Assembly (NCBI RefSeq): GCF_963853765.1 | Contig: NC_088855.1 | Coordinates: 4,340,001-4,404,000, forward strand | DNA from: Magallana gigas | Taxonomy: Eukaryota | Length of the DNA: 64,000 bases | Reading direction: 5' to 3' | Shown: positions 2,005-39,837 of the stretch, piece after piece | How positions within the stretch are numbered: position 1 is the stretch's first letter | Layout of the letters: each line of letters begins with the position of its first letter | Made by a program: the position numbers and the translations under genes | Notes under the pieces: generated by a model | The model's input: the letters and a program-made list of their open reading frames with translations, nothing else | The model's database searches: none | What the model was told of the DNA's origin: nothing

Positions 2005-2161
2005 AATGTCAGATTGTGCATGAAGATCAAGTTAAAACTTGTTTAAAAAATTCAGTTGCATGTCCTAAAAGGAATCATTTAGGACTGGTTCATTTTGGTT
2101 GAAGAGCACAGACCTGCCACAAGAAATTGAACATTCCTGCTGCATTATTTATGATGTAAGT
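2005..2161 (+). promoter_or_regulatory. Putative first exon and 5' splice donor of paralogue A, supplying the AT of a split ATG
   Basis: Block gattgtgcatgaagatcaagttaaaacttg aligns with 33915-34062 and 56439-56592. It ends ATG AT|GTAAGT (AT 2154-2155, GT 2156-2157). Phase matches acceptor AG|G at 18052-18054. Confidence 0.72.
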
Positions 2162-2432
2162 ATTTTAAATCTAATCAAATAACTGAATTAATTTCTCAAT
2201 TATAGTTTTATTTACTTTATCGGATAACATTGCAGAAAAAAATAAATAACTCGCTTTACTAGCTTCAAAGTCCTATGAAATAACTAAAAATAGCAGTTTT
2301 CTGTTATATTTGATATAAAATAAATATTGTATTATTTACACCCATCTCTAAACCTTTCTCCTATTATTTAACGACGTGAGCAGACGTATGTAAATTGTGG
2401 TCATCAGATCCATTTCTTCCAGCAAACATGTG

Positions 2433-2590
2433 AATTGTGGTTTCATTGTTATTTGAGGGCCTTAATTTAAATCACAGTTCAAAGGATACGTATATTGTGG
2501 ATAATGACCCTTTTAATGCAAAATGCACTTCCATTAACATTAAAGTTCGTGGTTCAACTCAATAACAAAAAATCGAATTCAACGAATTAA
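2433..2590 (+). mobile_element. Degraded copy of the same ~200-bp MITE family
   Basis: Starts with tgtggtttcatt (the TIR of the 28319 copy) and shares aaatcacagtt..aa.ggatacgta and cgtggttcaactcaa blocks. Confidence 0.6.
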
Positions 2591-3094
2591 ATTCAAAAAA
2601 AAAAAGTCATTGAAGCACCAGCTTGCCAAAATATGCAAACTATTTCATAGAATTTTCGAAATATTCTCTGAAGAATTCAAAGTTCAAATAGCTGTTCTAA
2701 TGAGTATGTTTGTTTGTTTTTGTTGGTTTATTTATCCAGATTTCTATACCAAAGCTTTGAATATGTATCATAGTAACGCGCGCTGTTGACAATCTTGATT
2801 AATCCTATTTTGGAATCGTTTTAAATGATTTTAAGATCGTTGATACATGCACAAAACTCCTTTATTTATAATGTAGACAGCATTTTAAATCACACAATAG
2901 CCGTTTCCAACGAATCAGTAAAGGCTTTAACTTTATTTGTCCTTGGTGTGTTGCTATGCGCGTTTGTATTTTAAACCATGTTTGTATGTTATTTAAATAT
3001 CTGATAAACTTGTGAATGTTTCCTATTTTAAATGCATATACCTTATAGATATTGATGTATAGAAAATTGAAACTTGTCAATTATATTTTTTTCT

Positions 3095-3227
3095 NNNNNN
3101 NNNNNNNNNNNNNNNNNNNNNNNNNNNNNNNNNNNNNNNNNNNNNNNNNNNNNNNNNNNNNNNNNNNNNNNNNNNNNNNNNNNNNNNNNNNNNNNNNNNN
3201 NNNNNNNNNNNNNNNNNNNNNNNNNNN
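3095..3227. other. Assembly gap (133 N)
   Basis: Run of N. Confidence 1.
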
Positions 3228-3400
3228 ACGATAACCCTTGGGTAGGCGTCGGTTTTAGGCTTAACTTAGGCCGGGCGCTAAGTTACGCCTTTATATTGAA
3301 ACGGACCTAGGACCGTCCTTAGTCCAAATACTTGACTTAAGTCCCGATTTACTCCAGGCGTAAGGTTACGCCGGGCGATCGCCTTTTAGTGAAACAGGCC
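3228..3400. mobile_element. GC-richer MITE-like segment; right end only, left end probably in the gap
   Basis: Internally palindromic (cttaggccgggcg..taagttacgcc / ggcgtaaggttacgccgggcg) and ends ttttagtgaaacaggcc, resembling GGCC-type Harbinger-like termini. Confidence 0.4.
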
Positions 3401-3559
3401 ACTTTTTTAAGGGCACAAAAACACTACGTGTGACATAGTCGGTGCTTTAACCTACTGAGCTATCCAGGACTTACTATTTTTCATATAAAAATTAACCGAT
3501 ATGAAAGAAATTGGTTTCCGAAGTTTTTGTCGGGTTTTTTTTTTTTGCAAAGTCCGACC

Positions 3560-3740
3560 CCAGGGACAGACCGGTCCTTAGGGATATCTAGGTAAAAAAA
3601 AACATGCAGAAACATACTATTCTTCTAAGAAAATGCTGTTTTAGCAAACTTTGAAAATTAATTATAAAATTGCAAGAGCAATATGATAGGTTTAAAATGC
3701 AAATTCGAAAAAAATCATAATATATATGTATGATAGAAAC
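3560..3740 (+). repeat. Dispersed repeat, second copy at about 22028-22200
   Basis: ccggtcct..aggatatctagg..aaaa.catgcagaaa ... tgcaagagcaatatgataggtt.aaaatgcaaattcgaaaa is present at both sites. Confidence 0.75.
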
Positions 3741-3744
3741 TGAC

Positions 3745-4465
3745 AGTTTTTGAGATTCGGGCTTATTTGAAATTGAATAGTGAACTGTGTTCTAGAACAC
3801 AGTTTGCATTTCAAAATTTATTATTCATATTTTGGGCCTGAAATGTTCAAGGTTATCTCCTAATGGTATACAACTGCCACTGTGAAATATGGTAATGTGG
3901 TCATCATTAGGATTTTAGATTCGCGCCTAACTTATTCAACAATATTCTCATTTTAGAACGCAGTTCGTAATTCAAAATTTATATTTCATATTTTGGGCCT
4001 GAAGTTTTCATGCTATACCACTACCACTGTGAATATATGGTGAAGTTGTCATCTCTAGTTTATAAAATAAAGGTATTTCGCAATTGAAAAGGTCAACTGC
4101 GTTCTTGACCGCAGTTCGCAATTGAAAATTTATAATTCATATTAAGGGCCTGAAATTTTCAAGGTCATCTACTAGTGGTATACAACTACCCCTTTAAAAA
4201 TAGGGTAATGTGGTCGTTATTAGATTTTTAGATTCGGGCTCCACTCATTCAACACTATTCGCAACTCAAAAGGTTCGCAGTTCGCAATGCAAAATTTATC
4301 ATTCATATTTGGGGCTTTAAATTTATAGGGTCATATTTTAGTGGTATACCATTATCACCGTTAAAATATGGGGATGTGATCATCTATAGTTTTTGAGATG
4401 TAGGGACTGAAAAAATTAACTATTCATTTTTGGGGAGATTTTAAACATCGAGGACCCCTACCCTG
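3745..4465 (+). repeat. Array of ~160-165-bp units ending in the terminus cccctaccctg
   Basis: ttcatatt..gggcctgaaa recurs near 3824, 3985, 4136 and 4301. Most units carry a variant of the palindrome gaactgcgttctagaacgcagttc. Confidence 0.75.
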
Positions 4466-4919
4466 GAACTTGAAAGTTTATAAGCTTTAGAATCTTACTG
4501 ACTGAAAATACACCTACGCTTATATTGAATATTTCCAGCTTTATTAACTCTAAAATATTTATATAATTTGAGTGATTTTGCTTCTTTTAAAGATGTTATT
4601 TACTCTGGGTTCGATTGGTTAAATTCGGATTGTTATAAAGATCAATGTATTAAAAGAAATTTGTTCTAAACACATAAATGATATGTATTATTCTTGATGT
4701 AAAATATTTGACATTTTATTTTACTATATTATGGAATAAGGCTGAAAGGAAAATAGACTTTTCGAAAAAAAGAGGAAATTTGACTAAATTTTGCAGATTC
4801 TGTTTTCTGTGTAAACATTTTTGAAAGTAAATGTACTTTACTATTAAAAGTTAACCTTTTATATTTAAGTCAATGTAATTTTGCATGTTTTTCTTGATAT
4901 TATCTCACTTAATCATTAA

Positions 4920-5745
4920 AGCTGACATGAACTCATAAAAGCGTTTGGTCGCCATATTAGTTTTAATAGCTCCTCTACTGCCACTGGGGTATATATACCG
5001 GTCGAGAAAGTTACGGTCGGTTGCTTTCCAATCGAGGCATTCATGTTACACGGACTTCTAAATGCATGGACTACATATTGTAGTAAAGAATAAAGGAAAC
5101 AGCAATCAATAAAATACAAAATATATTTATTTTTTGGAAGAATTTCCAAGGTATCCGTACTATTTTGCACAAATAGTGCTGCCTTACTTCACATGCACAT
5201 CGAGCACGTGTGTCGTTCATATAGAGTGCATAACGTCTGCATCTTTTTTGAAAACCCCGGCGGCACTACATCCAACACAGTAGATAAATGATAGTAAATC
5301 CAAGAAAGTAACAATGTAACATCATTTCCATCGGTTTCCACAAACAAATCCATGCGATCATTGACATTGCTCGATCTGCCACAGTGTGTGGTTGCGCATA
5401 TGCAATTTTATAACATACACAGGAAAATGGTCTACAATTATCGAGGATTTTTGAAGTATCTGCGCCTGGATTTCAGTTTGTCTTGTTTCGTCGTTCATTC
5501 GATATTCCTTGCCAGTGCTGTGGTTGTCATATTATTTTTGTTCAAACCCCGTTTCTACACGTCTCTTCCTCCAAGGTAAAGTGTTCGGGTGAATAAAATA
5601 CCTGAATGCGGTGAAGCATGAATAGTGCTTTCGGCCTTATAGAGGGGATGTGTAGCGATTGGCAGAACAATAGAAATCGACAACTAATATGGCGGTAGTC
5701 GGAGATAAAAGGGAAATAATGCGTATTTATGAATTCATGTCAGCT
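4920..5745. mobile_element. Non-autonomous Kolobok-like DNA transposon (826 bp, TTAA TSD)
   Basis: TTAA at 4916-4919 and 5746-5749. TIRs agctgacatgaactcataaa / tttatgaattcatgtcagct match 19/20. AG termini with a TTAA target fit Kolobok rather than piggyBac (CCC termini). Confidence 0.85.
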
Positions 5746-7039
5746 TTAAGATAAATACATGACCCACAATGCAAAAAAAAAATGAAAAATGCTAAATAAC
5801 GATAAAAGACACTTCATCTCATTTTTTTTATCATTGACCTCATATTAATTTTATACCCGCAAAATAATATCAATATAGGTAGTTTAGTTCAATTATTGTT
5901 TTTTGTATTTCATAATTCAATTATTTTGGAAAAATGGAAAGGGATTTGAAAACTAATAGAGGAAGTTCAAGCTGGAACATTTTTTTAAAAAGTTACTTCA
6001 AACTTAATCCTTTGTTTTTATTTAGTACCACAAACATTCATAAACTGTCTTTCATTTTTAAAGAGTCGGAAGTGGTCAATCTGATCCTTTATGCGGCGTC
6101 GACGAGAAACTTATTGTATTGTTTATTGATCGAGACATCATCAATAAAAAATATTTTACTATTACGCAAACATCAATAACTTATCATATCTTAAAATTTT
6201 CAATAAATTTAACAAATTAAACACATTTGAAATTTTCCGTACATGGGTTTAACCTTTTTTACTTACATCGATCAATTTAGCCTGTTAATGGACAGTAATG
6301 TAATTGATACCAGAAATTCTACAAATTATACAAATTTATAAAATAAATATGGTTAAAAAACATTTCCAGCAAACATAGGAGAAAAGGAAGGATTGCGTTT
6401 AAATAGACGCGGATCCAGAAATATTTTAAAAGAGTAGGGAGGGGTGGTGGGAAATTTGGATATATGGAGTACATGTTTGCTTGCAGGGTTTTCAAAGGGA
6501 GTGAGATTTAGGGCTGCATAAAAACTTATTTACAGCGAACCCCAATTGATGTAAATTGTATATGTAGGTTAATAAGAAGTTTATTACATGTCTGGTTGAT
6601 TTTCTTTTCCCTTTCTCTCCCTCTCTTTTGTTTATTTTTTTAGGGAGGGGGGGGGGCGAAAGGACGGAGTTGGAGGTAGGAAGCGGAAGCACTCTTTTCA
6701 AAATTCGCAACAATGAAAACCATTAAGATATGAAAAAGAAACAATACGATAATCTAAGATTGTTAATCATACCATAGACTTATCAAATCTGATGATATAA
6801 TGACCCCCCCCCCCAAAAAAAAAAAAAAAAAAAAAACTGACATAAAAAAATTCAAATGATCTCGTCATTTTAACAAAATGGAAAAGTCTTACACCTAACA
6901 TAATGGTTTTCATCTCATTATATATATGCCCCTAACGCGAGCCAAAACGTCGCAAAAACCACCAAGAAAATTGAGAATTATTTTCCCTCTGTCATGTTTT
7001 GACGTAAACCTTAAAAAAATACTTGTTGAGAAAATCAGA

Positions 7040-9114
7040 GAATTCCAAGCCCAGTGTTTAAAACCCCATTATAATGAATAGTGTTCTTTAAGTGGGAGCC
7101 CGAATCTAAAAAAATAGAGATAAACACATTATCATCACAGTGGTAGTAGTATGCCACTAGTAGATGACCCTAACATTTCAGGCCCAAAATTTGAATCATA
7201 AATTTTGAATTGCGAACTGCGTTCTAGAACCCAGTTACTTTTGAATTGAGTAAGTGTTTAATGAGTGGGGCTCGAATTTAAAAAATACCAATTCTGACCA
7301 CATTACCATTTTTACAGCCCGAATCTAAAAAACTAGAAATGACCACTACACCAAATTTTCAAAGTGGTAGTGGTATACCACTAGTAGATGACCCTGAAAA
7401 TTTCAGCACCCAGGGTAGGGGCCCTCGTTATTTTTGAGCCCGATGCTTAAAATCCCATTATAATGAAAAGAGTTCTATAAGTGAGAGCCCGAATCTCAAA
7501 AACTAGAGATGACCACTTCATCAATGTCCAAGACCAACTTTGTTTTTGATATCGACGATATCGAAAACAAAATGACGATATCGACATCGATATCGAATTT
7601 TTAAAATGCTTAACAAATTTTGATGTCGATATCGACGATATCGTACACAACTTGACGATATCGACATACACTGATGAAGTTGCAAAATCAATTTTATTGT
7701 CCATATCGACGATATCGTGCACAAAATGACGATATCGACATCGATATCGACACTAATTAGTTTTCAGGCTTACTAATTATAGGCGATATCGTACATAAAA
7801 TGACGATATTCTAATCAATAGCGATCCTAATTATTTCAGTTAAACAAATTTAACAATATTATTGAAAATGACAATATCAACCTCAATATTGACTCTTATG
7901 AATTCTTTTGAAATCATCGGTAATAAAATTTAATCAATAACAATGAGAAGAATGTCTGAATGATGGGTTTTAAGGATTGTAAGATGATAGATAATTGTGA
8001 TCGTCTAGATAGTCAAATCTTACGATAAGCATGGTACAGTTTTCCAAAGTACTTGATTACATTCTGCAGAAAAGCAAATTGATATTGATACAGCTTTTGT
8101 TGTGTACATATGTCAATCGATATCGTTACGATATCGTCGATATCGACGACATCGATGTATAAAATATAATGAGTTGCAGTTGTGTTTATATGCAAATCGA
8201 TATCGATCCGATATCGTCGATATCGCCGATATCGACATAAAATATGGACAACTTAAGTTTATCAAAGGAAAATACATTTTGATACGGTATTGTCGATTTC
8301 GTCGTTAAATATGGACAGAATTGAGTTCTGTACATATGCAAATCGATATCGATACGAAATCTTCGATATAAATGATATCGACGTTAAATATGGAGAACTG
8401 TAGTTGTGTACACAGGCAACTCGATATCGATTCTATATCGTCGATATCGGCATGAATATTAACAAATTCAGTTAAGGACAAACAAAATCGATATCGATAC
8501 GATATATCAACGATATCGACGTTAAATGTGCATGTTAAATTTTGTCAGCTGTAGCTGTGTACATACGAATTTAAGTTCTATTATATTGAAATCAGTGAAT
8601 CGATATCGATACAATATCGTTGATATCATCGATATCGATACTACATCGTGTCTTGGACATGATTTTCACGTGGTAGTGGTATACTACTAGTACATTGAAG
8701 ATGATCATGAAAATTTTTAGGCCCTTAATATGAGTTATAAATTTTTTATTGCAAACTGTGTTTAAGAACGCAGTTCACTTTTCAATTGCAAATAAGCTCA
8801 AATCTCAAAAACTACAGATGACAACATCACCATATTTTTAGGGTGGTAATGGTATACCACTAGAGGATGACCCTGAAAATTTCAGGCCCCAAATATGAAT
8901 TATAAATTTTGAATTGCGAACTGCACTCTAGAACGCAGTTCACTTTTCAATTGCGAAAAACCGAATTTCAAAAATATAGATGACCACTTCACCATATTTT
9001 CCAGTGGTAGTGGTTTACCACTATGTCGTGGCCTTGAAATCTTCAGGCCCCAAATATGAAATATTAATTTTGAATTGCGAACTGCGTTCTAGAACGCAGT
9101 TCACTTTTCAATTC
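7040..9114 (-). repeat. Inverted-orientation arrays of the same ~163-bp family, interrupted by 7524-8660
   Basis: tttcaggccc..aaat..gaa..ataaattttgaattgcgaactgcgttctagaac units are the reverse complement of 3745-4465. cagggtagggg at 7411 mirrors cccctaccctg at 4455-4465. Confidence 0.75.
7524..8660. mobile_element. Foldback-like element built from GATATC/ATCGAT modules
   Basis: Exact 11-bp TIR atgtccaagac / gtcttggacat. The two arms are mutually inverted arrays of gatatcgacgatatcg. Removing the element restores the host unit (gaccacttcatca+gattttcacgtggtag). No TSD is visible. Confidence 0.8.
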
Positions 9115-10670
9115 CGATTGTCCTCATGCTTTTGATGTCGAAAAATAATCTCCCATTTCTTCGATGTGCAGCTGATTACCAATCCTTTGCAAAGTAGTTC
9201 GTAAAAATTCATGCGCCTTGAAGGCGCTTAAAATACATTGTATTGCTTTTAAAACACCTCATTAATGAGAAAAAAACCAGCAAACGAACCCATTCTTTTC
9301 TTGATTTATTCACAAGCATAAAAAATATACAGTTGAGAAAACTTGGGTTTTTTTTGTGTAACAATTTGGTTTAGCGGAAGCTTTTACTTTGACGCAGTTC
9401 GGTGTTTTGTTTACTTTTTAAAATAATAGTGTTTATAGCATCATTGGCGATTTGCCTGATTACAGCTAGGAATTTGCTTCTCGCTTTTGGCAGAGCCTGG
9501 CTAAGAATGAATAGAGTGGGTTGACCTTTCACGTACAATAGACGATATGTATATGAAAGAATTAAGCAGACTCATTACTTATCAAGTGACATTTTATCGC
9601 TTAATTTTAACTATCGTAGGGAAAAGTTGGCAATCAGAAATCAATTTCTTTAATAATACAACTTACAAATAATGTGTTAAATTAAGCCCCTTTCACAATT
9701 GGCGCACGAGCACTTTACAACACTTTGCGATCGAAATTCGTTAGATTCGCACAAGCTCTCTCATACGTTGCATGCGTTTTACTGCTCGCATCAAGTCTCC
9801 TCAAAATATTGGACATGCACACTATTCAGACGCGACCGAATACGATCCAAATCATCGCAGTGCAACGCGCAAACATTAGTACGAACGTTTTACAACGTTT
9901 TGTGTACTCGCAAGAGTGATGCACGATTTTTAAAGGTCGTAAGATGAATCACGGTTGTTTATGCACGTATTGTGCGACCATGAGAATGTTGCTCAACATG
10001 TCTTATGTTATCTTGCAACGTTTTACTATCATTGCACGATTTATCAGTAATATGACATGCTTTGGCACTAGGATATATATACCCTGTATAAGCATCTCTG
10101 TTTCAGACCATAATTCAACAATATACATTTATTGCGTGATGGTAGGGGAAAAATGAAGATTTATTTCTCCAAGAAAAAAATCATATATTTCCTGAGGGCA
10201 TCGCCCGAGGGAAATTTGTTTTTCTTCGGGGAATAGATTGATAACGTTGATTTCTAAAAAATTTTGATAGCAATAACGTCGTGATTGTTTAATTTCCTCT
10301 GTTACTGTCTCACTTTTCTTTCATAATTTCGAATCTTAGATAGTTAAGTTTGTTTTGTGATATAAAGAGAATCATAATGATTTAATATTTTTGATTTTAT
10401 AATACTTGTTTACATCATATGCTCATATCGGCTTCTTCACTCCTACGACCTCGCCCTGCCAATTGACTTTCTAGACCAATCAAATATAATAGAATAATCA
10501 TATTGAGGTAAAATGATAAATGCTGCTGCACTTCTGTTTCTTTTTTTTTTTGGGGGGGGGGGACATGTTCTCTCTCTTTCAACTATGTCTACTGAAGAGC
10601 GTCAGAAATCGGCGGTATATACATGTATAACCCTCTGACTCGCACAAGCATTCGTACCATGGAACGCATA

Positions 10671-13600
10671 GTCTAGTCCGATTAATATTTTTCGAAAAAA
10701 AAACTTTTAACGGCAAATAATTATTATTTGGCCCATATGGTTTTTTAACATAATTAAAGTGTGCTGATTCCAAAAAATATGCTGGCCTTCATGAAAATGG
10801 CGTTAAGTAGCTCAAAATGGCGATTCAAAATGGCGGACAACCAAATTTTATATTTTTTTCTTATTATATAAAGTCTTTTCATTATTGACAAACAATAATA
10901 AAATGATCCAGCTTAGTATTTTATCATACCTAAAGTGTGCTAGTTTGAAAACATTTGCTGGCCTTCCCGAAAAAGCGTTAATTAGGTCAACATGGCGAAT
11001 CAAAATGGCAGATACCCAGATTTTATATTTTTTTCCTAAAAAAAATTTAAACTAGGGAAAACGCATAAAAACAATACTAATTTAGTCCAGCAAAGTTATT
11101 TTTGCATATTAATTAAGGCGTGCTTAGTCTGAAAAATGTGCTTGCTATGACAAAAATGTCATAATTAGATAAAAATGGCGGTCAAAATGGTCGACAGGCA
11201 AATTCTATAATTCTCTTAAGTCTTAAAAATTGGTCTAGCAAACATTTTTATCATAATTAGGTTGTACCAAGTTTAATGAAATGTGTTGGTCTTCATGAAA
11301 ATAACGTTAATTTTGTCAAAATGGCAATTCAAATTGGTGTATACTAGTAGCCAAATTTCATTAATCTCTATTTAGAATACTAAAGGCCTCTTAAATGGGA
11401 AAATTATTTGAATATCATAATTTCAATACTAATGATGTAACTGACAATCAAATTTGAACACTTGTATTATTAGAAAAAACTCCACCAGGTTTTTATTTGG
11501 ATTTTTTTTTCTGTTTCCCTTGTTAAGCTATAGTACATAATTATGTTATTTATACAATCTTTTTTTAATGATACGATTGTGATTTGAAATTTGCAAATGT
11601 CTACCCGGGAAGTAGGCACGTTTACATTCACACATAAAGGTTCTGCAACCTGTGGGGCAGTTGCAAGATATCAAATCTAAGAAAGCTTTAGGTATTAGAT
11701 CTTAAGGTCATTAGTTCCAGCAACAAACAACCATCACTTAATTTTTTTATCCCATCTCGACTGGGCATGGTAATATGGGCATGCCTATACATGCCTGTCT
11801 CCCTATCATTACCTTGGTGTGTGTTTGTTTCATAAGCAACGTAAGGCAAATCCTAGGTTGGGACATATTCCCGGGCTTTGGTTATAGGAAGAAAGCAAAT
11901 TAAACCGTGTCATAGGGCAAGGGTTTTGGTTATCCATATAACTAAAGAACTTCTCGAACTCTTTGATTTTCTGGTAAGTTAGTTCCCCCTTTTCATACTT
12001 GTTTCTGTTCACTTATTATGTCGATTTTCTCGATATGCTGTAGAAATAAGAAGTTGTGTCACACCATATCAGTGAATGAAATAAACCAAGTGCTAATTCA
12101 AAGTTCTATAAAAGGGGAACATTTTCTCTTCAACAACATTGACAAGGATGTTTATCGGTTTTAAAGAGGTTCATACATCCATCAGCAAACTTAGTTGTGA
12201 GGATATATGTTGCAAATTAACACTGGCATGGCTAGCATAAAAAAGCCTCAACTTTTTCTCTGAATATGAACACGCATTGCTATACTTTCCCCGGCACATT
12301 TGGCCAAACACATGTTAACATTTTTGCAAGAGGTTCTTTTATCTTTAACGAAGACAACGGCAGCTTGATTCCTTATACAATACATAAATTGTCCCTGGTA
12401 ATGTTAAAAAGAGTAAAATTCTTTGGGTTGCCCAAAACATATTGCGCATTCTTATCAATATATATAAAGCTGGACGATATGTTGATCTTGGCTCATTTTG
12501 AATCACGAGCTTTTCAAGTGTATATGAAGATATATTAGTTAGATTTATTTGCTAGAAAGGTATTAAAGGAAGAGACAGACATATACTTGAATAGTTCTTC
12601 ATGTCGTACACTGTTCTTAAGTACCTGATTGTATCTCTGTTATCATATATGACATCGATGTCTTTAAAGCCTTATATTTACATTTTCCGGTGTCTTTGCC
12701 TGTGATAACACTACGTATAGTTTTTCTACTATATAACCCATAATACAAATGACGCCAAAATCGAGGCGCCAGCGGGGTTTGCTATTTTATATTTAAATAT
12801 TTAATCGTATGATGGCTCAAAATAATATAAATATAAGTAATAAGGAATCATTCTTTGAATATTATGAGGTGATAATTTCGGTCGGGGCGTGATCAAATCT
12901 ATCTTAAAGCCCTTCGGGCTTTATTGGATTTGATCACGCCCCGACCAAAATTATTACCTCATAATACTCAAAGAATGATTCCTTATTCCTTATAAAACAC
13001 TAGTTTTATAGAGCAGAAATATTTCTCCTATCTCAAAATTTGCTTTGTAAGCATTTGTTGTATTTCACGAACTTAATTAAACTTAGATGATTAAATAAAA
13101 TCCAGAAAGGTTAATGAACAAGATGGATATTAAAAAGCATGAACACAGAATGTTTAAACAAAATACCGGTATAAGCCTTAATAAGACAAAACGGTAAAAA
13201 TTAACAAGTTTTAGTATAATATGGAATTGTTCTTTTTCTTCGTTAAAGTGTTCCAATCTAATTTTTCATGTGCATATTTGTATAATGTAATACTTACACG
13301 TTTTATCCCTGTAACCGGCTTTAAAAGAGAATTATGAATTCTGGCTGTCGGCCATTTTGAAACGCCATTTTGACCCAAATAACGCCATTTTTGTAAAAAT
13401 AAGATTATATCGTCATACTCTGTATTACCTTATTATGAATAAAATCTTTTTGATGGACCGGACTATAATTGTTTTAATGCTTTGTTTCTTGTTAAAAAAC
13501 TTAAATAGAAAGTGATGAAATCTGGCTGTAGGCCATTTTAAATCGCCATTTTGACCTATTTTACGGAGTTTCTGTCATAGCTTGCATATTTCTTAGGACT

Positions 13601-14404
13601 CAGCATGTCTTAGTTATATTGATAAACTTTGCTGGACTAAATTACACTTGTTGGTCTCATGCTTTTTTCAGTTTTAAGAAACTTTATAGAAAAAATATGA
13701 AATCTGGCTGTCCGCCACTTTGACATTAAGGCATCGCTTTGGTGGAAACCAGCATGATTCCCAAGACTAAGCACGTCTTATTAATGATTTGAAAATGTAT
13801 TTAAAAAATTATAATTGTTTGTTTCTCGCCTTTTCACCATTTAAGAAACTAAAGGGAAAAAATATAAAATCTAGATGCCCACCATTATGAATCGCCATTT
13901 TTTTTTTGGTTAATTTAAGACATTTTCTTAAAAATGGCATATTATTCCTGACTATCCGCACCTAAATTATGATTAAAAGCTAAGCTGGACTAAATATTCA
14001 TTGTTTGTCCCACGCTTTATGTCCATTTATAACGAATTAACAAAAGTTTGTTATCCACCATTTTAAATCGCCACTTTGACCTAATTAACCACATTTGTGG
14101 AAAGCCAGCATAATTGTAAGACTCAGCACACATTGGATATGATGAAATGCTATTTTGGATCAATTCATTAGTGATTGGCATTATATTTTCCCATTGAAGA
14201 GGCTTTAAGAGAAAAATTTGTAGATTGGCTGTCCGCCATTTAGAATTGCTATTTTGACCTACTTAACGCCATTTTCATGAAGGCCAGCATATTTTTTCAG
14301 ACTTAGCATACTTTAATTATGATAAAAAACCATGCTGGACCAAATAATAATTTTTTGGCGTTAAAACGTATTTCTAGAGTTCTTTTTAGAAATTAGAACT
14401 AGAC
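10671..14404. mobile_element. Foldback element with long modular inverted arms nested in the Harbinger-like element
   Basis: gtctagt... / ...actagac termini. Left arm (10671-~11360) and right arm (~13340-14404) are inverted arrays of ~170-bp units containing aaaatggcg/cgccatttt. For example, gctggccttcatgaaaatggcgttaagtag is present in both orientations. Confidence 0.75.
12839..12987. repeat. 149-bp near-perfect hairpin (palindromic mini-element)
   Basis: aataaggaatcattctttga..cggtcggggcgtgatcaaatc pairs with gatttgatcacgccccgacc..tcaaagaatgattccttatt around a central aaagcccttcgggcttt stem-loop. Confidence 0.85.
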
Positions 14405-15102
14405 AAGCATGATCGCACGTCCAATCGCATTGGCGCACGTTCAATCGTCCGATCACCTGGTCTCTCGCACGATCCTATCGCAATATCTTTCAACAGTTGC
14501 TTTCATTGTACAACAGTCGCATACAGACGCAAGATATATTGCAAGATTTAATGCGATTACATCGCACAACGCTAGCTTCGATCGTGCAAATTTCGTTCGA
14601 AAACTTTTTATCAAATGCAATTATTTCGGCAACGGTTTACGATTCATATCGATTCCATAGGTCGCACGAATATTCAATCGCTTCTGGTCGTGTGCCAATT
14701 GTGAAAGGGGCTTCAGATGGGTAAAGGACATATACAGTCACGTCGAATAGTTTACCGAAATCTATGTCAAGTTAAATATTTGCATCTTAACGTATAAATA
14801 AATGTATGCCGGAAAATAAGTTGAGTGCGTAAGAGGTATTTTTGCATCCACAGTTTATAAAAAAAATCATACATGACACGATTTTTAGTCATATTTTGTG
14901 GCGTATTTGGAGTAAAAAGTTTTACATGAGGTTGAGTAAAAATATACATCATGCTTCTTATAATTAGACATTTCACTAACTATAGGCCAATAAAACACGG
15001 TTTGTCTTTAGTAATTCATCTCTTAACTTTGCTACACGTCTGATGAATGTTTATGTGATCCGCCATTCATATCGCCACTACGCATGAGTGTATTCCTTTT
15101 AA

Positions 15103-17560
15103 AGGAATGATCGGCAATAATGATATATTGATATCTAAAAGCAATCAGCATGATCAGTTTGATGTAAAATAATTAAAAAAGTACTGTATATTTTTACAAA
15201 ATATAGAATATTTTGAATCTGTACACCATTATTTCATCATTATAAACCGTCAACAAATTTAATTTTGAAATAAATTTGGGGAAAGCCGTTCGTAAACTCC
15301 TTTTCTAGTTTTATATTTTTAACGTAATTATTAAATGTTAATGTATCTTCTTCTTCTTCAGAATACTGAGAAGGGCTCTTCAAAGAGCATTAAAACGTAT
15401 ACAAAGAAAAAGTTGTATTAAAATAATTTAATGCGACTGAAAAACATTGAATGCCATCATAACTTGCTATTGGGGTCGCATTATAACGTAACCTTGTTTT
15501 TAAATCAAGCCGTCTTCCTAACTACTATTATGCAACATCAATAGATCGAGGTCAGTTCATGGAGCATCTTCTTATGATTGAGGTCAGTTCATCGAGGTCA
15601 ACTGCATTACTGAATGAATCTTTCGATCGAAATTCTTACGCGTGAGACAAAATGTGCATTCTTGAATTAACAGGTCGAACTGTATTTTATGTGTGTTTGC
15701 ATCTCTTAAGGTAAATGAATTGAAATAAAACTGAGTTAAATGTTATATAAATACTAAACCAAACTTCAAGTTTTATAAGAACTACTTATGCAAGCGGAAT
15801 GTGTGCGCACGTGGAAGCATTTGCCGGATGCCTCATATGGACACAACTGTGATCGGCCGAAGCCGATTACAAAAACCTAGCATTGAAAACACTATGGAAG
15901 AACAGTTTGTTTACAAAATAGATTTACGTTTGTTATGTCTTAAATTAGATAATTCTTATATCAGATGATACTCGAAGCATAATTATTCCCATATTTATTA
16001 ATGTAGAACGATATAAATTGTTAATTATGTGTAATAAAGATGAAATACGATTTAAGCATCATTGACACGGTAAACGGAGTAAATATCCCCTCTCTTATTT
16101 AGGGATACATGTACTGAAAGTGTTTATTTATTCTTTATTAAAAATTCCTCTAAACAAAATTCCACATGTGGTTTATAACTTATGAAGTAAAGACACGGAA
16201 CACATGGAGCACGAACCTGATAAGCAAAACCCTTACAACTTCACGAAAAAATTATGTTTCATTCGGCTTCAATTCCTCTTCCATCAATCTACATGGTCTT
16301 CCCTTTTTTCCTATCCCTGTCGGTCTGTCTCCTTTTTTTTTTCATTGCCAACCTGTCAAACTTAACGATATACCTATCTTTCTCGTCGTCGCCATTGTTG
16401 TTAATACACCGAGATGGGTGTCACATGACCCATTTAAGGCGGGGTTATTCAAATCTTTTGTATTTTTTTTCTTTGAGTTTACAACACGACGAACGACACA
16501 CAAATTCTGGTTGACTACTAGAAATGCATTATTGGGGCATTGTATGCATTAAAAAAACCCAGAAAATTAAGTTTTCACCAAAATACTGACCATACCCTTT
16601 AACACTTTACACCTTCCAAGGGTTACAAAAAGATGCTTGACCAAAAGATAGCTTGGTACCATATAAAAAATTACCGCACGGCGACAGTTTCCTGAAAGAA
16701 AATATGGTACATTTCATTATATTAAACAACTCACGTGTTTCTCTAATTTCTTTCAAATGTTAAAAAACATGATTTTTTAAATTTCTTAGATCTTTGTTAT
16801 TCGATTGATTTATAAAGTGTAATTTTGTGAAAGTTATATCTTTAAGCAAAGAAATGAAGCAAAAAATCAGATCTTATTATTGTTATTCACTAAAAATACG
16901 CCATATATAGCTTTAAGTACCGTTTTGGTATTTCGATTTTCATTTTAGACATTTACATTAATATAATTCCAGTGCAAAAATATCATTTCTATAAGAAAAA
17001 CATTTTTGTAAGATTTATAGAATTTTCTACCTATATTCTTAAAGTAATTATTTTTGAAATTTATATTTAGACGGGATTTTAACAAATCTTTTATAGGATT
17101 TTACGTTGTATCAAGAATTCATTATTTTGTGAAAACAAAAATTCTTATAGGAAAACTATCTGTCTACATTAAATTTCTACATGTTTATCTTTCAAATTTT
17201 TATCTTTGGAAAATTTGTTTCTCTCTTTAGGTTTTATAATTTCCCAATCAATATTAATTTTGGAAGACAAATATCTCGTCTGTTGGAGGAAGCACACTAA
17301 AATAGTGAATTGCACTCCTCTGTTATATTCTTTCATTTACCTTTTTTTTTTTTTACGAAACTATATCAAAAGTTGGAGCAAAAATGTCTCCATGGTACTG
17401 TCATAGATATCCGGTGTGATGTTACATAAGTTTATATTTTTAATGACAAACTGTATTACAAAGGAGAAGTTATCATTCATAAGATTACTATATAAAAATA
17501 AAGTTATAATAAAAACTTATTTAATGGTATCTGTCCCAACGTCGTTAAATGCACATTCCT
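15103..17560. mobile_element. Possible Kolobok-like non-autonomous element
   Basis: TTAA|AGGAATG ... CATTCCT|TTAA. The TIR is only 7 bp and there is no recognisable coding content. Confidence 0.35.
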
Positions 17561-18053
17561 TTAAAAGATAAACAGTAGGGCACGATATTTTTATGACATG
17601 TCTTCCATTTTACTTAGAGAAATTGACTACAATAAAAATAAATTGTTTCTGTGCATTTATAATAAAAAAAAATTTACAGAATTTATTGAATTGGAAGATT
17701 TTGTAATACTTTACAATTTTTTAAAACATTATTCTGTGGGTACTTTGAGCGTTTTGCAATACATAAATAATCTTCGCAGTAATTTCATTTTGCTGTTTAT
17801 CTTTAGCTGTTTTTCCCTGATGCGACAAAGAGAACAAACAGAAATGATCTTTACCATTAAAATAATGAGTGTAGTTTAAACAAAAGGGCATATATAAACA
17901 TTGAAATGTTAAGTAAAAGTCGCGGTAATTCGGGACAGAATATACTGGTTTAATATTTTCACTTTAATGCTAGTTTCATAAATTTTGTTAAAATTTCATT
18001 GGGTGACTTCGTCATCTTTGTTTTTAATACTGATTTTAATGTATTTATTACAG

Positions 18054-21000
18054 GGTTTCTTCCAGCATGTTTCTCCTGGGTTACTGTATATCAACCATAT
18101 ACAGTTGTTTTGCCATTTCAGCTGATTCCTGCATCATGAATTCATTATCAATGAAACACGAGCAGAAATCATTTGCAGACCTTCTGCTTGAGGAACGAAA
18201 TATGATTTTTTTTAATTTGGTTTTCAATCAATCAAATTCTGATAAATTTGTGGAGGAAAGAAAATTAGAAAGATGGGTTTGGGTTGCCAACGACTATCGA
18301 TATATTTTGAGTTATCCTGAAGATGTGGATGTTTTCAGCTTTGGTTTATTGAAAGCTAAACAAGGTACCATAGAAGTGGAAATAAACATGGAGAATCTAA
18401 CCGAAGCTTGTAAGAGTCATTTCAATTCCTACTTGGCTCAACATATTTCAAAGATTGTACAGAGAAACAGTTCAATCACAGATAACGCCTTCAACCCATC
18501 TGAAGGATACATATGCCATTCTAAGCTTGAAATTGGCAACTTGAAACAAAAAGTCAGCGATTTTTCCGCTGTTAAACTTGGGTATCAATTCTGGTGTTAC
18601 ACGGACAACAACACATGTGCGGTTGTAGAGAAGTCATATGTAAACTACATAGTCATCTTTATAATATTTTTTACCTATTGTTTCTATCCCCTTGCAATAG
18701 AATCCGCATTTTATATAGAAGATAAAAAAACGGTTCAGGGTTCATATTATATGTCCGAGTCTCCCTATAGTCCTTCAGTGTTTTGTAAGCGAATTCTTTT
18801 CGCAGGAAATAATAAATACCTAGCAACGCTGCGTATAATATCATTAGTAACAGCCCTAACAACTGGAATTTATTACATCAAATCAGAGGTTCATGACCGT
18901 TGTAACTGTTTGTTGAGGTCTTCAAATGATAATCAAAGTTTTCAGCATGCAGAAAATATGTATATCAACAATAAATTTGCTGTAGCTTTAGGAGTTATAC
19001 AATTTCTGATGATCAATATATGTGTTCTGGTAAATTCTAATGGTATTTTAGATGATTTCATTATTTTGGATACCACAAACAGTTGTAAACAAGGCACGTT
19101 TTTAAAAACAGTGAAAGTCTCTGAATTTTTATTAGAAGATGACGAGGAAAGAAATCAAGACAAGGAACAAATAGAACAGAGAAATAATTTAGTGTCCCGA
19201 AAAATTCAAAAAATATTTCTTGTACTGACTTATTCCTTTTGGTCAAAATTATTTTTCATTAATAGTTGCACACGCTCATGTTGTTGTAATAAAGACAACG
19301 GTTGCGTATGTTTCAGTGTGCGCATACAGTCAGGCATTTGTTTCTTTATAAATGTTGCCCTCGTGTTAGGTAGTACGTTTTGCCCTTTGGTTTCAAATGT
19401 TTACATATTTTTTGTCAATTTCTTAAATGTAGTAACTTGTAAAGGATGTAAAGCATTAATACCGTGTGTGGAAAAATGTCAGAAAAGCGAAATTAAAGAT
19501 CAAATACCAAACAAAAATGGGGAAAAAGATATCAGTAGAACAGAAGATGTAAACATAGGAATAGTTGGCGAACCGATTGAGAACGTCGGAATTGAAAATG
19601 TTAACTTAGAAATATGCGATGAACAGAGTAAGCACACCGGTAATGAGGAAATTTGTAAGGGAGAAATAAACGAAAATGTTAATGATATTTCAAAGACTGA
19701 GTCTTGTAAGAATTTCTGGTTACAGTCATTTTCTCACGGCATTACGATTTTTCTCCTTGTTTTGATGTACAAGTTATCATTCAATATCTTTTTTTGTGGT
19801 TTGAGCTATGTAATACAATTCTTTATATTTACATTGTTACTGGCTGTGCCTCATTTTCCAATTCAATATTATGTTTACATTATTTTTTTTACATCTGTTA
19901 TCATTTATATTTCCAGGTTTGTTTTTCAATTCATCAAACTTTACAGAAATTTATTGGAAACAATTCTCGAAATCCAAGAGCAAACTAGTATTCCAATTAA
20001 TCATTTTGATAGGATCGTTGCAAAACACTTTCCTTTATCTAACGAACTGTTTTACTTGCTTGTGAAAATAATGCTTTCGGGTCTATTTTTTGCAATAATA
20101 TATGATACAATGCAGAATGTAGGTTATATAAGATTTGGAGCACAGCCAGATTTGACTACTATTATTTCCTTGATTTTTTTATTTGGACCACCACGTATAG
20201 TAGAGGCAATGTTGGTGAGAGACTTTACAAGTCGTGTTCACATGAAAGAAAAGGAAATTAAAGATGAACTTGTAAAAATTAAAGCGGAGAAGGATACTAA
20301 AAGATCAAAGTCTAATAAAACAATGTCAATTCTTCATGCAGTTTTAACTGAAGAAGAGAGGGAACTCACTTCTGTGAAAAAATGTATAGAATGCTGGAGA
20401 AAAGTAAGACCCGGAGAAGCATACACAACAGAAGAGAAAACACCTGGATGCTGTCTTTGTATTTTCAGCTTGCTGTGTTGTGGCTGTTGCAACTTTGCGT
20501 TTGATGATAAAGGAAATAGTAAATGTTGTGTCAAATTGAAAAAAAAATCCAAAACAAAAAAGAGATTTGAAGAGGAATCAACCACATCGAAAGAGGAAAC
20601 ATCCACATCGGAAGAAGAAACATCCGAAAAACCCACAAACAACCGTTGTAATTATGTACCAGACTGCTTTTGGTGTAGGTGGTTAGGCATGTTTTTCTGT
20701 GGCTGTTGTAATTTTCCGTTAGACGATGAAGGAAATTGTAAATGTTGCGTCATATTGACAACAAATGCCAAATCAAATAAGACAACCGACAGCTCTGAAG
20801 AACATTATAAAATTCCGTGTTTATGTGTAAAAGACTGTCTAAACAAAGACACTGGCGAAAACCCTGAAGAGAAAATGAATCTTTTTAACGAACTTAAAAC
20901 AGACACTTTATACAAAATAACAGTAGATACTGTTGATGAAATCAGACCCCGCATCATATACAATGCCAAAGCTGAAATTATAAACGACGGCATAATAGAG

Positions 21001-21534
21001 CTTGAAAAAATAAGCATTTCAGATAAATCCGATGAAAACAAACAACGAAATGAAAATAACAGTAATGAAACTAGCATAGAAAAAAGCAATGAAAGCATTA
21101 ACAATTGTTCGGAAAATGAGCTCAGTACAAAACCTAAAATAATAGATATTGTATCCCAAAAAGATGAACATGACAATGGAAAAAACAACGCGTTCGGCAA
21201 TGCAGGAAATGCTCGCACCGCAGACGCTGCCGATGAAAAATTACAACAGCATGAAACCAGCAACAGTAATGAAACTGGCAACGAAAGTGTTAAGATCGTA
21301 TATGAACGTTCTGCAATTGGACCCTTTGCAAAACCCGGTACTAAAAATAAAGTTGCCGCAATAATTGAACATGGTGCCAGTAAACCAAGCCTCATTAAAG
21401 AAGAAAATGATAATCACTTAGACAAAGAATCTGAAAATCAAGACAACGAAGAACATAAAGGAAAAGACATTGAAGATACTAAATATAAAGTCGATGAAAG
21501 CATTGAACTTCAATCTTTTAAAACTAAACTCTAA
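18054..21534 (+). CDS. Paralogue A main exon: uncharacterised multi-pass membrane protein, 1160 aa when spliced to AT at 2154-2155
   Basis: 3.5-kb uninterrupted ORF behind acceptor gtatttattacag|G. Hydrophobic N-terminus (MVSSSMFLLGYCISTIYSCFA), WVWVANDYRYILSYPEDVDVFSFGLLKAK motif, about 8-10 hydrophobic segments, FLFGPPR motif, Cys-rich modules and a long acidic Asn/Glu-rich tail. Homologous to three other copies in the window. AATAAA near 21626. Confidence 0.92.
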
Positions 21535-30198: not shown

Positions 30199-30339
30199 TG
30201 TTATGTTATTGCATTATTATTTGTTTATTGACATAAGCGACAGTCTGTATCAAAATGATTATCTGTGATGTAAGCACCTTGTCACGTGATCTTTTGAGTA
30301 AAGAGTTTGAACGCCATTATTAAGTGTTGTGACTTTACA
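30199..30339 (+). repeat. 3' LTR of the Gypsy element (ends at CA 30338-30339, or alternatively CA 30348-30349)
   Basis: Starts TG directly after the polypurine tract. The sequence beyond it aligns to paralogue D coding sequence. Confidence 0.7.
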
Positions 30340-30582
30340 AAAATAAACATTTTGAATGTAACAGTAGAATGTGAGCGTCAATTTGACTATTACAATGCTC
30401 AATATGTTTCAGAAATGTAAATAATTGTACAAACTGATATTTTGAGTAAAGAGTTTGAACGCCATTATTAAGTGTTGTGACTTTACAAAAATAAACATTT
30501 TGAATGTAACAGTAGAATGTGAGCGTCAATTTGACTATTACAATGCTCAATATGTTTCAGAAATGTAAATAATTGTACAAAC
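30287..30582 (+). repeat. Near-perfect 148-bp tandem duplication spanning the LTR/host-gene junction
   Basis: 30287-30434 is repeated at 30435-30582. Confidence 0.9.
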
Positions 30583-31130
30583 CCAACTACAGAGTAGACT
30601 CATCCAAAGGGTATATATCAATTCCAAAAGTGTTAAAAAAACGTTGTGTGAGAATACATAAGTAATATATCTGCCGTCAATATCGGATATCCATTTACAT
30701 CTGTTGTGGAAAAATCGTATGCCAACCACATCGTTATCTTCATCGTATTATTTTACCTACTGTTTTTATCCACTTGCAATGTAAATAACATTTTAAATAG
30801 AGGACAGAAAAATGCGCCAAGGATTTTATTATATGTCGGAGTCTCCTTATGGTCCATCTGTATTTTGTAAAAGAATTCTTTTCGCAGGCAATAATAAATA
30901 CCTCGCAACATTGCGTGTTATTTTGATCGTAACAGTCTTAACAACTTTAGTTTACTACATAAAATCAGAAGTCCACGATCTCTGTAAATGCCTGTTAAAG
31001 TCTTCAAATGATAATCAGAGTTTTATGCACGCTGAAAACATCTATATTAACTCACCGGAACTTGTATTTTGGGGAGCTGTGCATTTCGTGGTAATAAACG
31101 TATGCATTTTGGTGAATTCAGATGGTATTC
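30340..31130 (+). pseudogene. Paralogue B: internal fragment of the membrane-protein gene, closest to paralogue D
   Basis: Aligns with about 61200-61870. ORF 30812-31135 differs from D at 8 of 105 residues. Upstream part has stops and a ~20-bp deletion. Bounded by the Gypsy LTR on the left and a HINE-like repeat on the right. Confidence 0.9.
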
Positions 31131-31281
31131 CTTGAATTTCTTCCTTTAAAGAAGGCGAGGAACTTCATTTTAACAAGCTTGAATTTCCGATGATGTTATA
31201 TGCTAAGTTTGGTTGAAATAGGCTAAGTTTTTCAAAAAAAGTCGAAAATGTTTAAATTTTACTGGCGAAAGTACGAACGGG

Positions 31282-33914: not shown

Positions 33915-34062
33915 ATTTGTGCATCACGATCGATCGAATTTAAATTTGATCGGTAAATTCAATGGCACGTCTTTAGATTTAAAGGTTAAATTTAACTGGT
34001 GGAAAAACAGAGATTAAGAAGAAGAAAGTGCTATTAACTACTCCACGTTCAATGATGTAAGT
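33915..34062 (+). promoter_or_regulatory. Putative first exon and splice donor of paralogue C
   Basis: gatcgaatttaaatttgatcggtaaat matches 56455-56480. Ends ATG AT|GTAAGT (AT 34055-34056). Phase matches acceptor AG|G at 36660-36662. Confidence 0.72.
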
Positions 34063-34959
34063 AAATTAAACTTTAGGAATCGACTTTGTATTGTTTTGCG
34101 TAATTGATAAATGACTGTTCGCGTCGCCTTAAAAGTGAATGGGGTTGATGTCTCGTTATTAAAAGAGATATATATGATGAGTTTTTACCAGAATAAGGAT
34201 CACTATACATAACCGAAGCTACAATATATGACAGAAGTTTTAAAATTCAAAAAACATCTTTTAGACGGACTGTAACTCTGATTCAGTACTCGATCTTTTT
34301 TATAATCTTGAGTTCTGAATTTCTTAAACATGTAAACATTTAATAAAGAATTGATTTCATTTACTGAAGCCAATCAAAAAGCTGTACGAAATTTTAAACA
34401 GATGCAACATTCTTAGTTAACATGAGTTGACAGTTGAGAGCTCAGGTGAGCTTTCCTAACAATCTAATTAAAATTAGACTTTTGATCCGCCCCAAATATA
34501 ATGTGGTGATATACCAGGAGAGAATCTAATCAGACTGCTTTTCTTATCACCTGTTTTCCGGCGTCTGTCTGACCATCTGTCTGTCTGTCCGTCCGTCTTT
34601 AACCGTTTTACGTTTCTATTTCCTCTTCAGAACCACTGGGCCAATTCCAACTAATTTTGGTACAAAGCACCCTTGAGCGAAAGGAATTAATGTTATTTAA
34701 GTACATCGTAATAACAATACTTTCACTGCTTTCAAATTTTAAAATGTTTACAATATTTAACCAAATATTACGTGTAAGAAAATTTTGCAAAGATAAAAAG
34801 TAAATGCATAATTATCATCCGTGTCACTCTCTACCTAGAATGTGAAATTCTTGGCCTTTTAATCAGGGGGTCGGGCCCCAAGGCTGGGCCAATATGGCTA
34901 ATAGAGTAAAAAAAATGATTTTTTTAAAAATAATTTCTCCACTTCCATATTTTTTGCCA

Positions 34960-35320
34960 GTGCCTTTCAAACTCTGAGAATCTACAGTTTTTTTAGCAAA
35001 ATATATTTCTCTACAGATATTCTGTTTTTCATTATATTTTCAAGTGCACTGAAATTCAGTTTTGGAACTTCTTTATAACTACTTACAAATATGTATTGTT
35101 TTATTATTAGAATTAAAAGGTAATGTACTTTATACAAATTTCTCTCTTTATTTTTTCCAAATAAAATTGGGTTTTTTTCAAATGTTACTTGCATTTCAAA
35201 TTTCCTTAACCACCACTCCATAGTTCCGCATAGTTCCAAAAGTTCTTTTACACAATAGCAATCTACAAATAAGTGTTCAATAGTCATTAACTCTTTTACA
35301 AAAGGAGCAGACTGAAATAA
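34960..35320 (-). mobile_element. L1/Tx1-like ORF2 C-terminal fragment
   Basis: CSFCK..TIEHLFVDC..V..WW and LILIIKQYIF....F..LENIMKNRISVEKYI motifs. Confidence 0.75.
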
Positions 35321-35405
35321 AAAAAAATATGTGACTTATTATTATGACATACTTGTTATATTTATCAGATTCAATATGTAATATAAAGTACTAACCCCCC
35401 CCCCT

Positions 35406-35407
<2 letters not shown>

Positions 35408-35463
<56 letters not shown>
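35408..35463. repeat. (CA)n microsatellite
   Basis: Perfect dinucleotide run. Confidence 1.

Positions 35464-35469
<6 letters not shown>

Positions 35470-39585: not shown

Positions 39586-39837
<252 letters not shown>

What the first reader, a model, noticed from the sequence alone, without database searches (positions are those of the whole stretch)
2151..18066. Initiator ATG split by an intron (AT|G) in all three full-length paralogues
Seen: each main exon begins AG|G with an open frame. Each gene has a homologous upstream block ending AT|GTAAGT (2154-2161, 34055-34062, 56585-56592). Splicing gives ATG GTT TCT (A), ATG AAT CCT (C) and ATG GTT TTC (D), each followed by a signal-peptide-like stretch. 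Copy D has no other ATG before its signal segment, and its exon 1 has GTG where A and C have an extra in-frame ATG. Inference: translation of D depends entirely on this splice, so retention or skipping of intron 1 would act as an on/off switch. ORF-based annotation would mis-start these genes.
Basis: partly seen in the sequence, partly recalled or inferred. Interest (0 to 1): 0.75.

Follow-up and report, generated by a model that had tools for sequence, protein, structure and literature searches.

The report
Intron-split start codon, oyster gene family
Three tandem copies of an uncharacterised oyster membrane-protein gene have an intron inside or just after their start codon (AT|G); the splice is seen in cDNA of related oysters, but this layout is rare rather than new, and standard gene annotation already handles it.

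Summary
The sequence observation holds. Three homologous 5' blocks end in TGAT|GTAAGT (2152-2161, 34053-34062, 56583-56592), and each main exon starts AG|G in frame (18054, 36662, 60873). That 10-mer occurs nowhere else in the window (expected 0.17).

- **Splice seen in relatives.** Five cDNA contigs of copy D's orthologue and four of an A-type homologue carry exactly this junction. NCBI's Crassostrea angulata model LOC128189161 starts its CDS on the two bases AT before GTAAGT.
- **Not seen in this species.** Four RNA runs gave no depth on D's exon 1 or on the start of exon 2, so there is no verdict here.
  - Copy C is a pseudogene in this assembly, with three in-frame stops and a frameshifted middle.
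  - In A and C an intact ATG sits directly upstream in frame, so the split codon may be Met2. Only D depends on it.
  - The intron-retention "on/off switch" has no evidence.
  - The assembly gap lies inside A's 15.9 kb intron, so reading frame is not at issue. Continuity across it cannot be tested.
- **Prior knowledge.** Split start codons are documented (VAMP1, Nosema RPL19) and described as relatively rare.

Verdict: a real and conserved feature, but ordinary.

The parts
2020..2155 (+). Copy A 5' block and exon 1. An internal acceptor AG at 2070-2071 is used in a relative's cDNA. Exon 1 ends with an intact ATG (2151-2153) followed by AT (2154-2155) of the split codon.
   Evidence: (L001 35-122 aligns to 2068-2156 at 85%)
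2156..18053 (+). Copy A intron 1 (GTAAGT...ACAG), 15.9 kb, phase 2. It contains the assembly gap at 3095-3227.
   Evidence: No other exon-1-like block lies between 3228 and 18053.
18054..21534 (+). Copy A main coding exon. G 18054 completes the split ATG, there is a further in-frame ATG at 18067, and the frame is intact to the stop. The protein is 1161 or 1160 aa.
30339..31140 (+). Copy B, an internal fragment of a family member with stops.
33932..34056 (+). Copy C 5' block and exon 1, ending with ATG (34052-34054) followed by AT (34055-34056).
34057..36661 (+). Copy C intron 1, 2.6 kb.
36662..39485 (+). Copy C main exon, a pseudogene in this assembly. It has stops at 37350, 38388 and 38940, and the frame is lost at about 37640-38240.
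   Evidence: compared with the intact relative P0021
56454..56586 (+). Copy D 5' block and exon 1, ending GTG AT. There is no intact ATG next to the donor. A possible 13-codon uORF starts at about 56508 if the transcript starts upstream of it.
56587..60872 (+). Copy D intron 1, 4.3 kb, rich in repeats, with an in-frame TGA at 60853-60855.
60873..63477 (+). Copy D main coding exon. G 60873 completes the only ATG ahead of the signal segment, and the frame is intact. The protein is 868 aa.
   Evidence: dN/dS is 0.34 against the C. angulata orthologue.

Best explanation
The window holds this genome's whole tandem cluster of a bivalve-restricted, uncharacterised multi-pass membrane-protein gene: A intact, B a fragment, C a pseudogene, D intact. 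Each gene has two coding exons: a short 5' exon that contributes only ATGAT (A, C) or AT (D) to the coding sequence, and one large exon. A canonical GT-AG intron in phase 2 sits after the second base of an ATG, and splicing rebuilds that codon with the first G of the main exon. The ancestral arrangement was ATG-AT|G, that is two consecutive Met codons with the second one split. Four of the five 5' blocks in this genome still have it. The D lineage lost the first ATG (GTG here, GAG in C. angulata), so in D the rebuilt AUG is the only start ahead of the signal peptide. That AUG has a purine at -3 and G at +4. Tandem duplication copied the promoter, exon 1 and intron together, which is why every copy shares the feature. 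It is an ordinary inherited intron position, not a dedicated switch. Shown here: the sequence layout, the homology of the blocks, the spliced junction in relatives' cDNA, and the NCBI model. Inferred: that this species splices the same way, that ribosomes start at the rebuilt AUG, and that the N-terminus is a signal peptide.
For: Sequence layout and frames. TGATGTAAGT occurs three times, only at the exon-1 ends. Five homologous 5' blocks all end in TGAT|GTA(A/G)GT. A-type cDNA contigs L001-L004, from four runs, align 35-122 to window 2068-2156 and 122-1327 to window 18054-19259, and their ORF begins MMVSSS. D-orthologue cDNA contigs L018 and L025-L028, from five runs, are 99% identical to the C. 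angulata main exon. They join L014:8003 to L014:10391 and read ..CAGAGAT|GGTTTTCACC. The NCBI gene range for P0011 starts at L014:8001, which is AT followed by GTAAGT, and 2 + 2506 nt gives 836 codons. D is open for 873 codons, with dN/dS 0.34 and dS 0.26 against its orthologue. Start-codon contexts. A Saccostrea cucullata homologue also has an in-frame AG|G acceptor and a single AT|GTAAGT 684 nt upstream.
Against: There is no RNA evidence from this species. Three contig-kept runs labelled or guessed as RNA and one raw poly-A run gave zero depth on 56448-56646 and on 60826-61024, and almost none elsewhere on D. An exact-match scan for D's spliced junction in metagenome contigs found nothing. 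In A and C the first AUG of the spliced mRNA is the intact one, so the split codon need not be the initiator there. A also has ATG 18067, which would still give a hydrophobic N-terminus. In relatives the block that carries AT is an internal exon preceded by other 5' exons (L002, L018, L025-L028), so 'exon 1' may be the wrong name. Linkage of A's exon 1 to its main exon runs across an assembly gap.
Confidence: 0.8

Rival explanations
1. In A and C the true initiator is the intact ATG wholly inside exon 1 (2151-2153; 34052-34054), and the split codon merely encodes Met2. Only D has a split initiator.
For: The intact ATG is the first AUG of the spliced mRNA and is in frame. The relative's ORF is called from it, as MMVSSS. 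Four of the five 5' blocks keep it.
Against: Its context is weak (U at -3, A at +4), whereas the split AUG has A at -3 and, in A, G at +4, so leaky scanning is plausible. The two products differ by one Met, so this matters little.
Confidence: 0.45
2. Retention or skipping of intron 1 is a regulated on/off switch for D.
For: An unspliced D transcript has no in-frame ATG ahead of the signal segment: there is a TGA at 60853 and the next Met is residue 45. Contigs that still contain intron 1 exist for relatives (L015-L017, L019, L020).
Against: Those contigs run colinear with the genome for 0.4-1.2 kb of intron, and two of them also lack transposon insertions, so they are most simply genomic DNA. 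No run showed regulated retention. Loss of product on intron retention is true of any coding intron.
Confidence: 0.05
3. D, and perhaps A, is silent or decaying in this species, so the split ATG here is a relic rather than a working start.
For: There was no RNA depth on D's 5' half in four runs. No full-length 100%-identical A or D protein was found among Logan-derived ORFs. Within the same cluster, copy C is broken and B is a fragment. A DNA contig from another sample carries a C-to-T change at 19327 that turns Gln into a stop in A.
Against: D and A have uninterrupted frames of 873 and 1164 codons. dN/dS is 0.34 for D. D's orthologue is assembled as cDNA in at least five runs. Only about 1% of the raw run was sampled, and the tissues are unknown.
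Confidence: 0.15
4. A is translated from ATG 18067 on transcripts that start inside intron 1 or stay unspliced, which makes the upstream exon dispensable for A.
For: ATG 18067 is in frame, has A at -3 and still precedes the hydrophobic segment. ORF callers pick the equivalent Met in relatives (P0003, P0004, P0008).
Against: All four A-type cDNA contigs include the upstream exon and its ATGATG. The contigs behind P0003 and P0008 run colinear with genomic intron, so they say nothing about the mRNA.
Confidence: 0.1

Closest known systems
Crassostrea angulata LOC128189161 (NCBI model; protein P0011 here)
   Same: It is the orthologue of copy D (80% aa identity, 84% nt identity, colinear including parts of the intron). 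Its CDS starts with the two bases AT, followed by GTAAGT, a 2.4 kb intron, then AG|G GTT TTC. The protein begins MVFTSTISLIFC, as predicted for D.
   Different: It belongs to another species and has GAG rather than GTG before the AT. In cDNA its AT-bearing block is an internal 60-nt exon preceded by a further 5' exon. The matching acceptor AG is not conserved in the window's D.
Vertebrate VAMP1, whose start codon is split across exons 1 and 2
   Same: Exon 1 contributes only the two coding nucleotides AT and exon 2 supplies the G (bioRxiv 10.64898/2026.06.30.735536). Simpler annotation tools also miss it.
   Different: It is an unrelated gene in an unrelated lineage, and is not a tandem family.
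Start-codon-disrupting introns in general (Nielsen and Wernersson 2006, PMC1626468; Nosema ceranae RPL19, PMC2685015)
   Same: Phase 1 or phase 2 introns in codon 1 are a recognised class, described as 'relatively rare'. A microsporidian ribosomal protein gene has its start codon interrupted by an intron.
   Different: That paper's main signal is phase-0 introns just after the ATG in proteins without signal peptides. The genes here are predicted to have a signal peptide, and their intron is in phase 2.

Membership tests
Genes whose start codon is interrupted by a spliceosomal intron | Canonical GT...AG intron boundaries that fall inside an ATG (AT|GT...AG|G) | tested here: met
   The G is ambiguous between the donor and the first exon base, and the GT-AG rule places the cut at AT|G.
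Genes whose start codon is interrupted by a spliceosomal intron | The mature mRNA carries the junction that rebuilds the ATG | tested here: inconclusive
   Met in relatives: nine cDNA contigs, L001-L004, L018 and L025-L028. In this species there was no read coverage of the junction region.
Genes whose start codon is interrupted by a spliceosomal intron | The rebuilt AUG is the first in-frame AUG of the ORF | tested here: inconclusive
   Met for D, where no other in-frame ATG lies next to it or before residue 45. Not met for A and C, where an intact in-frame ATG lies immediately 5'.
Genes whose start codon is interrupted by a spliceosomal intron | Translation actually initiates at the rebuilt AUG | not testable with these tools
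   This needs ribosome profiling or N-terminal proteomics. Only the sequence context is favourable.
Uncharacterised bivalve multi-pass membrane protein family (LOC128189161-like) | Full-length sequence homology with conserved motifs (for example ..FGPPR.., ..DFTSRV..) and multiple hydrophobic segments | tested here: met
   There were 81 representatives among 1.84 billion proteins. The named ones are all 'uncharacterized' and come from Crassostrea, Saccostrea, Ostrea and Mytilus. No Pfam domain matched.

The most novel reading that the evidence does not exclude
The duplicated exon-1 blocks, including two orphan ones just upstream of the window, may be used as alternative first exons or as cassette 5' exons spliced in series. 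Relatives' cDNAs L002 and L026 show this. Such use would add or remove upstream AUGs and short uORFs, and together with D's total dependence on the splice it could tune translation of the family. That would be a 5'-leader switch built from relics of gene duplication.
Probability: 0.08. Interest if true: 0.4.

Novelty: new member of a known kind. Interest (0 to 1): 0.2.

Why it matters
The main value is practical. ORF-based or prokaryote-style gene callers truncate or mis-start these genes; the Logan ORF calls do exactly that and lose the signal peptide. Annotating this genome therefore needs splice-aware models. Biologically this is a tidy example of an intron position inside a start codon that was inherited through tandem duplication. 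One lineage (D) then lost the back-up ATG and became fully dependent on the splice. It opens no long-standing question, and the protein family itself remains of unknown function.

Tried and rejected
1. RNA reads of this species. Runs X1-X3 (contigs) and X19 (raw poly-A) were laid on 56050-62000. Depth fell only on intronic repeats (57.6-57.8 kb and 59.2-60.6 kb), plus one contig at 61473-62000 with 22 differences. Nothing covered exon 1 or the junction, so there is no verdict.
2. An exact scan of metagenome contigs for D's spliced junction found nothing.
3. Logan contigs for close relatives of C (L017, L019, L020), for A-like genes (L015, L016) and for A itself (L005) all run colinear with intron 1, so they are genomic or unspliced and say nothing about splicing.
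4. Function of the protein. Pfam gave nothing for A, D or eight distant relatives, and the ESM Atlas gave no usable hit. The AlphaFold2 model of D built with a 22-sequence alignment had mean pLDDT 51 and pTM 0.37. That is too poor for a fold search, so none was run.
5. ATGTAAGT at 23841 was checked as a possible exon 1 for fragment B. It has no homology to the other blocks and is a chance match.
6. The 72% match of L001's 3' UTR to 56719-57130 raised the idea of a shared exon. It turned out to be a dispersed repeat with more than 40 copies in the genome.
7. The Ostrea edulis locus for P0022 was not on record.
8. L001-L004 were first taken as A's orthologue. With dS 0.77, against 0.26 for D and its orthologue, they are more likely an A-type paralogue in the relative.

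Full report
**What is in the sequence.** The window is AT-rich animal DNA (about 30-40% GC). Its long ORFs match only proteins labelled 'uncharacterized' from the oysters Crassostrea, Saccostrea and Ostrea.

- Copy A's 5' block ends ..TTATGAT|GTAAGT, with AT at 2154-2155. Its main exon follows ..TTACAG| and starts with G at 18054.
- Copy C ends ..CAATGAT|GTAAGT (AT at 34055-34056), and its main exon starts at 36662.
- Copy D ends ..TCGTGAT|GTAAGT (AT at 56585-56586), and its main exon starts at 60873.

Joining the exons gives ATG GTT TCT, ATG AAT CCT and ATG GTT TTC, each in frame with the large exon. The 10-mer TGATGTAAGT occurs three times in the 64 kb, only at these sites, against 0.17 expected. 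The blocks upstream of the donors are homologous to one another. Strictly, the G could belong to either side of the cut, and it is the GT-AG rule that places the cut at AT|G. The mRNA is the same either way.

**The assembly gap.** The gap at 3095-3227 lies inside A's intron 1 (2156-18053), 940 nt after the donor, so no reading frame crosses it. Three indirect points favour linkage:
- No other exon-1-like block lies between 3228 and 18053.
- The block at 2068-2155 is as similar to the 5' leader of an A-type cDNA (85%) as A's coding exon is to that cDNA (82-85%).
- That cDNA joins the two homologous pieces.

**Is the splice real?** I could not show it in this species. It gave zero depth over D's exon 1 and over the first 150 nt of exon 2. 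Only intronic repeats were covered. That is no verdict, not a refutation.

In relatives the evidence is direct.
- Logan contigs L001-L004, from four runs, encode a protein starting MMVSSS. They align 35-122 to window 2068-2156 and 122-1327 to window 18054-19259, so they lack the intron and carry ..TTTATGAT|GGTTTCTTCC.
- For copy D, contigs L018 and L025-L028, from five runs, are 99% identical to the C. angulata main exon. They join L014:8003 to L014:10391 and read ..CAGAGAT|GGTTTTCACC.
- The NCBI model for C. angulata LOC128189161 (P0011, which starts MVFTSTISLIFC) has a gene range that begins at L014:8001, the AT in front of GTAAGT. The arithmetic fits: 2 + 2506 nt makes 836 codons.

So the split start codon is already modelled by a standard eukaryotic annotation pipeline. 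The ORF calls attached to the Logan contigs do start in the wrong place (MSANSC.., MFFLGF.., MSKQW..).

**Corrections to the reading.**
1. Copy C is not intact here. Measured against an intact close relative (P0021), it has stops at 37350, 38388 and 38940 and is out of frame at about 37640-38240.
2. This window holds the whole family in this 564-Mb genome: A intact, B a fragment at 30339-31140, C broken, D intact.
3. In A and C an intact in-frame ATG lies directly 5' of the split one (ATG-AT|G). The split codon is therefore either Met1, by leaky scanning past a weak first AUG with U at -3, or Met2. A also has ATG 18067 before its hydrophobic segment.
4. Only D depends on the splice. It has GTG in place of the first ATG, a TGA at 60853 in the intron, and its next Met at residue 45. 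Its orthologue has GAG at that place, so the back-up ATG was probably lost before the two species split.
5. Four of the five 5' blocks in this genome keep ATGAT, which points to ATG-AT|G as the ancestral state.
6. D looks functional. Its frame is open for 873 codons, and dN/dS is 0.34 (dS 0.26) against the orthologue.

**The on/off switch idea.** Nothing supports regulated retention of intron 1. The contigs that still contain the intron run colinear with the genome for hundreds of bases. Two of them also lack transposon insertions present in the window. They are most simply genomic DNA. Losing the product when an intron is retained is true of any coding intron.

**What the genes are.** The proteins have a hydrophobic N-terminus followed by a conserved ..ALS|A(D/N)SC.. 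motif. An N-terminal region of about 190 residues follows, then roughly ten hydrophobic segments, then a Cys-rich tail. No Pfam family matches A, D or distant relatives. An exhaustive profile-free search found only 81 representatives. The named ones are from oysters and Mytilus, and all are 'uncharacterized'. The ESM Atlas gave nothing. The AlphaFold2 model was too poor (pLDDT 51) to justify a fold search. The function therefore stays unknown. The best description is a secreted-pathway, multi-pass membrane protein family restricted to pteriomorph bivalves that evolves by tandem birth and death.

**Comparison with what is known.**
- Nielsen and Wernersson (PMC1626468) describe introns that disrupt the start codon as a recognised and relatively rare class.
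- Vertebrate VAMP1 has exactly the AT|G layout, with two coding bases in exon 1, and is cited as a test case for annotation tools (bioRxiv 10.64898/2026.06.30.735536).
- Nosema ceranae RPL19 is another example (PMC2685015).

The present case is a further instance, inherited by all copies of a tandem family. It may be older than the Crassostrea-Saccostrea split. A Saccostrea cucullata homologue has an in-frame AG|G acceptor and a single AT|GTAAGT 684 nt upstream, although its public model starts at an internal ATG. That age estimate is only an inference.

**Verdict.** The feature is real and conserved, but it is a known kind of gene structure that the orthologue's annotation already captures. 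Interest is low. The only mildly new aspects are that D relies wholly on the splice, and that relatives' cDNAs splice duplicated exon-1 blocks as extra 5' exons.

Noticed in passing
L023:2440-2593 and L023:9234-9370 (G000:C3:4332440-4332593 and 4339234-4339370, just upstream of the window): Two further exon-1-like blocks end in ATGAT|GTAAGT and ATGAT|GTAGGT, with no family coding exon behind them. The 5' exon of the relative's cDNA L002 matches the second block (23 nt, 96%). In L002 it is spliced to an acceptor inside the A-type exon 1; the equivalent AG in the window is at 2070-2071.
   Followed up: partly
L026:27-144; also L018, L025, L027 and L028 5' ends: In the C. gigas/angulata lineage the AT-bearing block of D's orthologue is an internal 60-nt exon preceded by a non-coding exon that was not found within 8 kb upstream. 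One contig (L026) splices two tandem exon-1-like blocks in series before the main exon.
   Followed up: partly
window 36662-39485: Copy C is a pseudogene in this assembly, with stops at 37350, 38388 and 38940 and a frameshifted middle. Contigs about 96% identical from other samples (L017, L019, L020) encode an intact 870-871 aa protein.
   Followed up: yes
window 39652-54068: A 14.4 kb insertion is bounded by 26-nt terminal inverted repeats (TACAGT(A/G)CAGGCAACGCGGATCCCGT), and the retroelement noted by other readers is nested inside it. The insertion is absent from related contigs L017 and L019, which run straight from 39651 to 54069. A second piece, 54223-55189, is also absent from them.
   Followed up: partly
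window 19327: A DNA contig from another sample (L005, 99.88% identical over 5 kb) has T instead of C here, which turns a Gln codon of copy A into a stop. This is either a possible null allele of A or a contig error.
   Followed up: partly
window 56719-57130: A dispersed repeat of about 430 nt has more than 40 copies across the chromosomes at 78-82% identity. It also forms the 3' UTR end of the relative's transcript L001.
   Followed up: partly
window 59234-60626: Repeats in D's intron 1 have high depth in all four RNA runs, with many partial alignments and loose ends. This looks like expression of repeat copies elsewhere in the genome, not of D.
   Followed up: no
L024:1282-1291 and 1964-1990 (Saccostrea cucullata, LOC134248801): The public model starts at an internal ATG. 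However, an AG|G acceptor lies 22 nt upstream in frame, and the only AT|GTAAGT in the 2 kb upstream lies 684 nt before it. The model may therefore be eight codons short at its N-terminus.
   Followed up: partly
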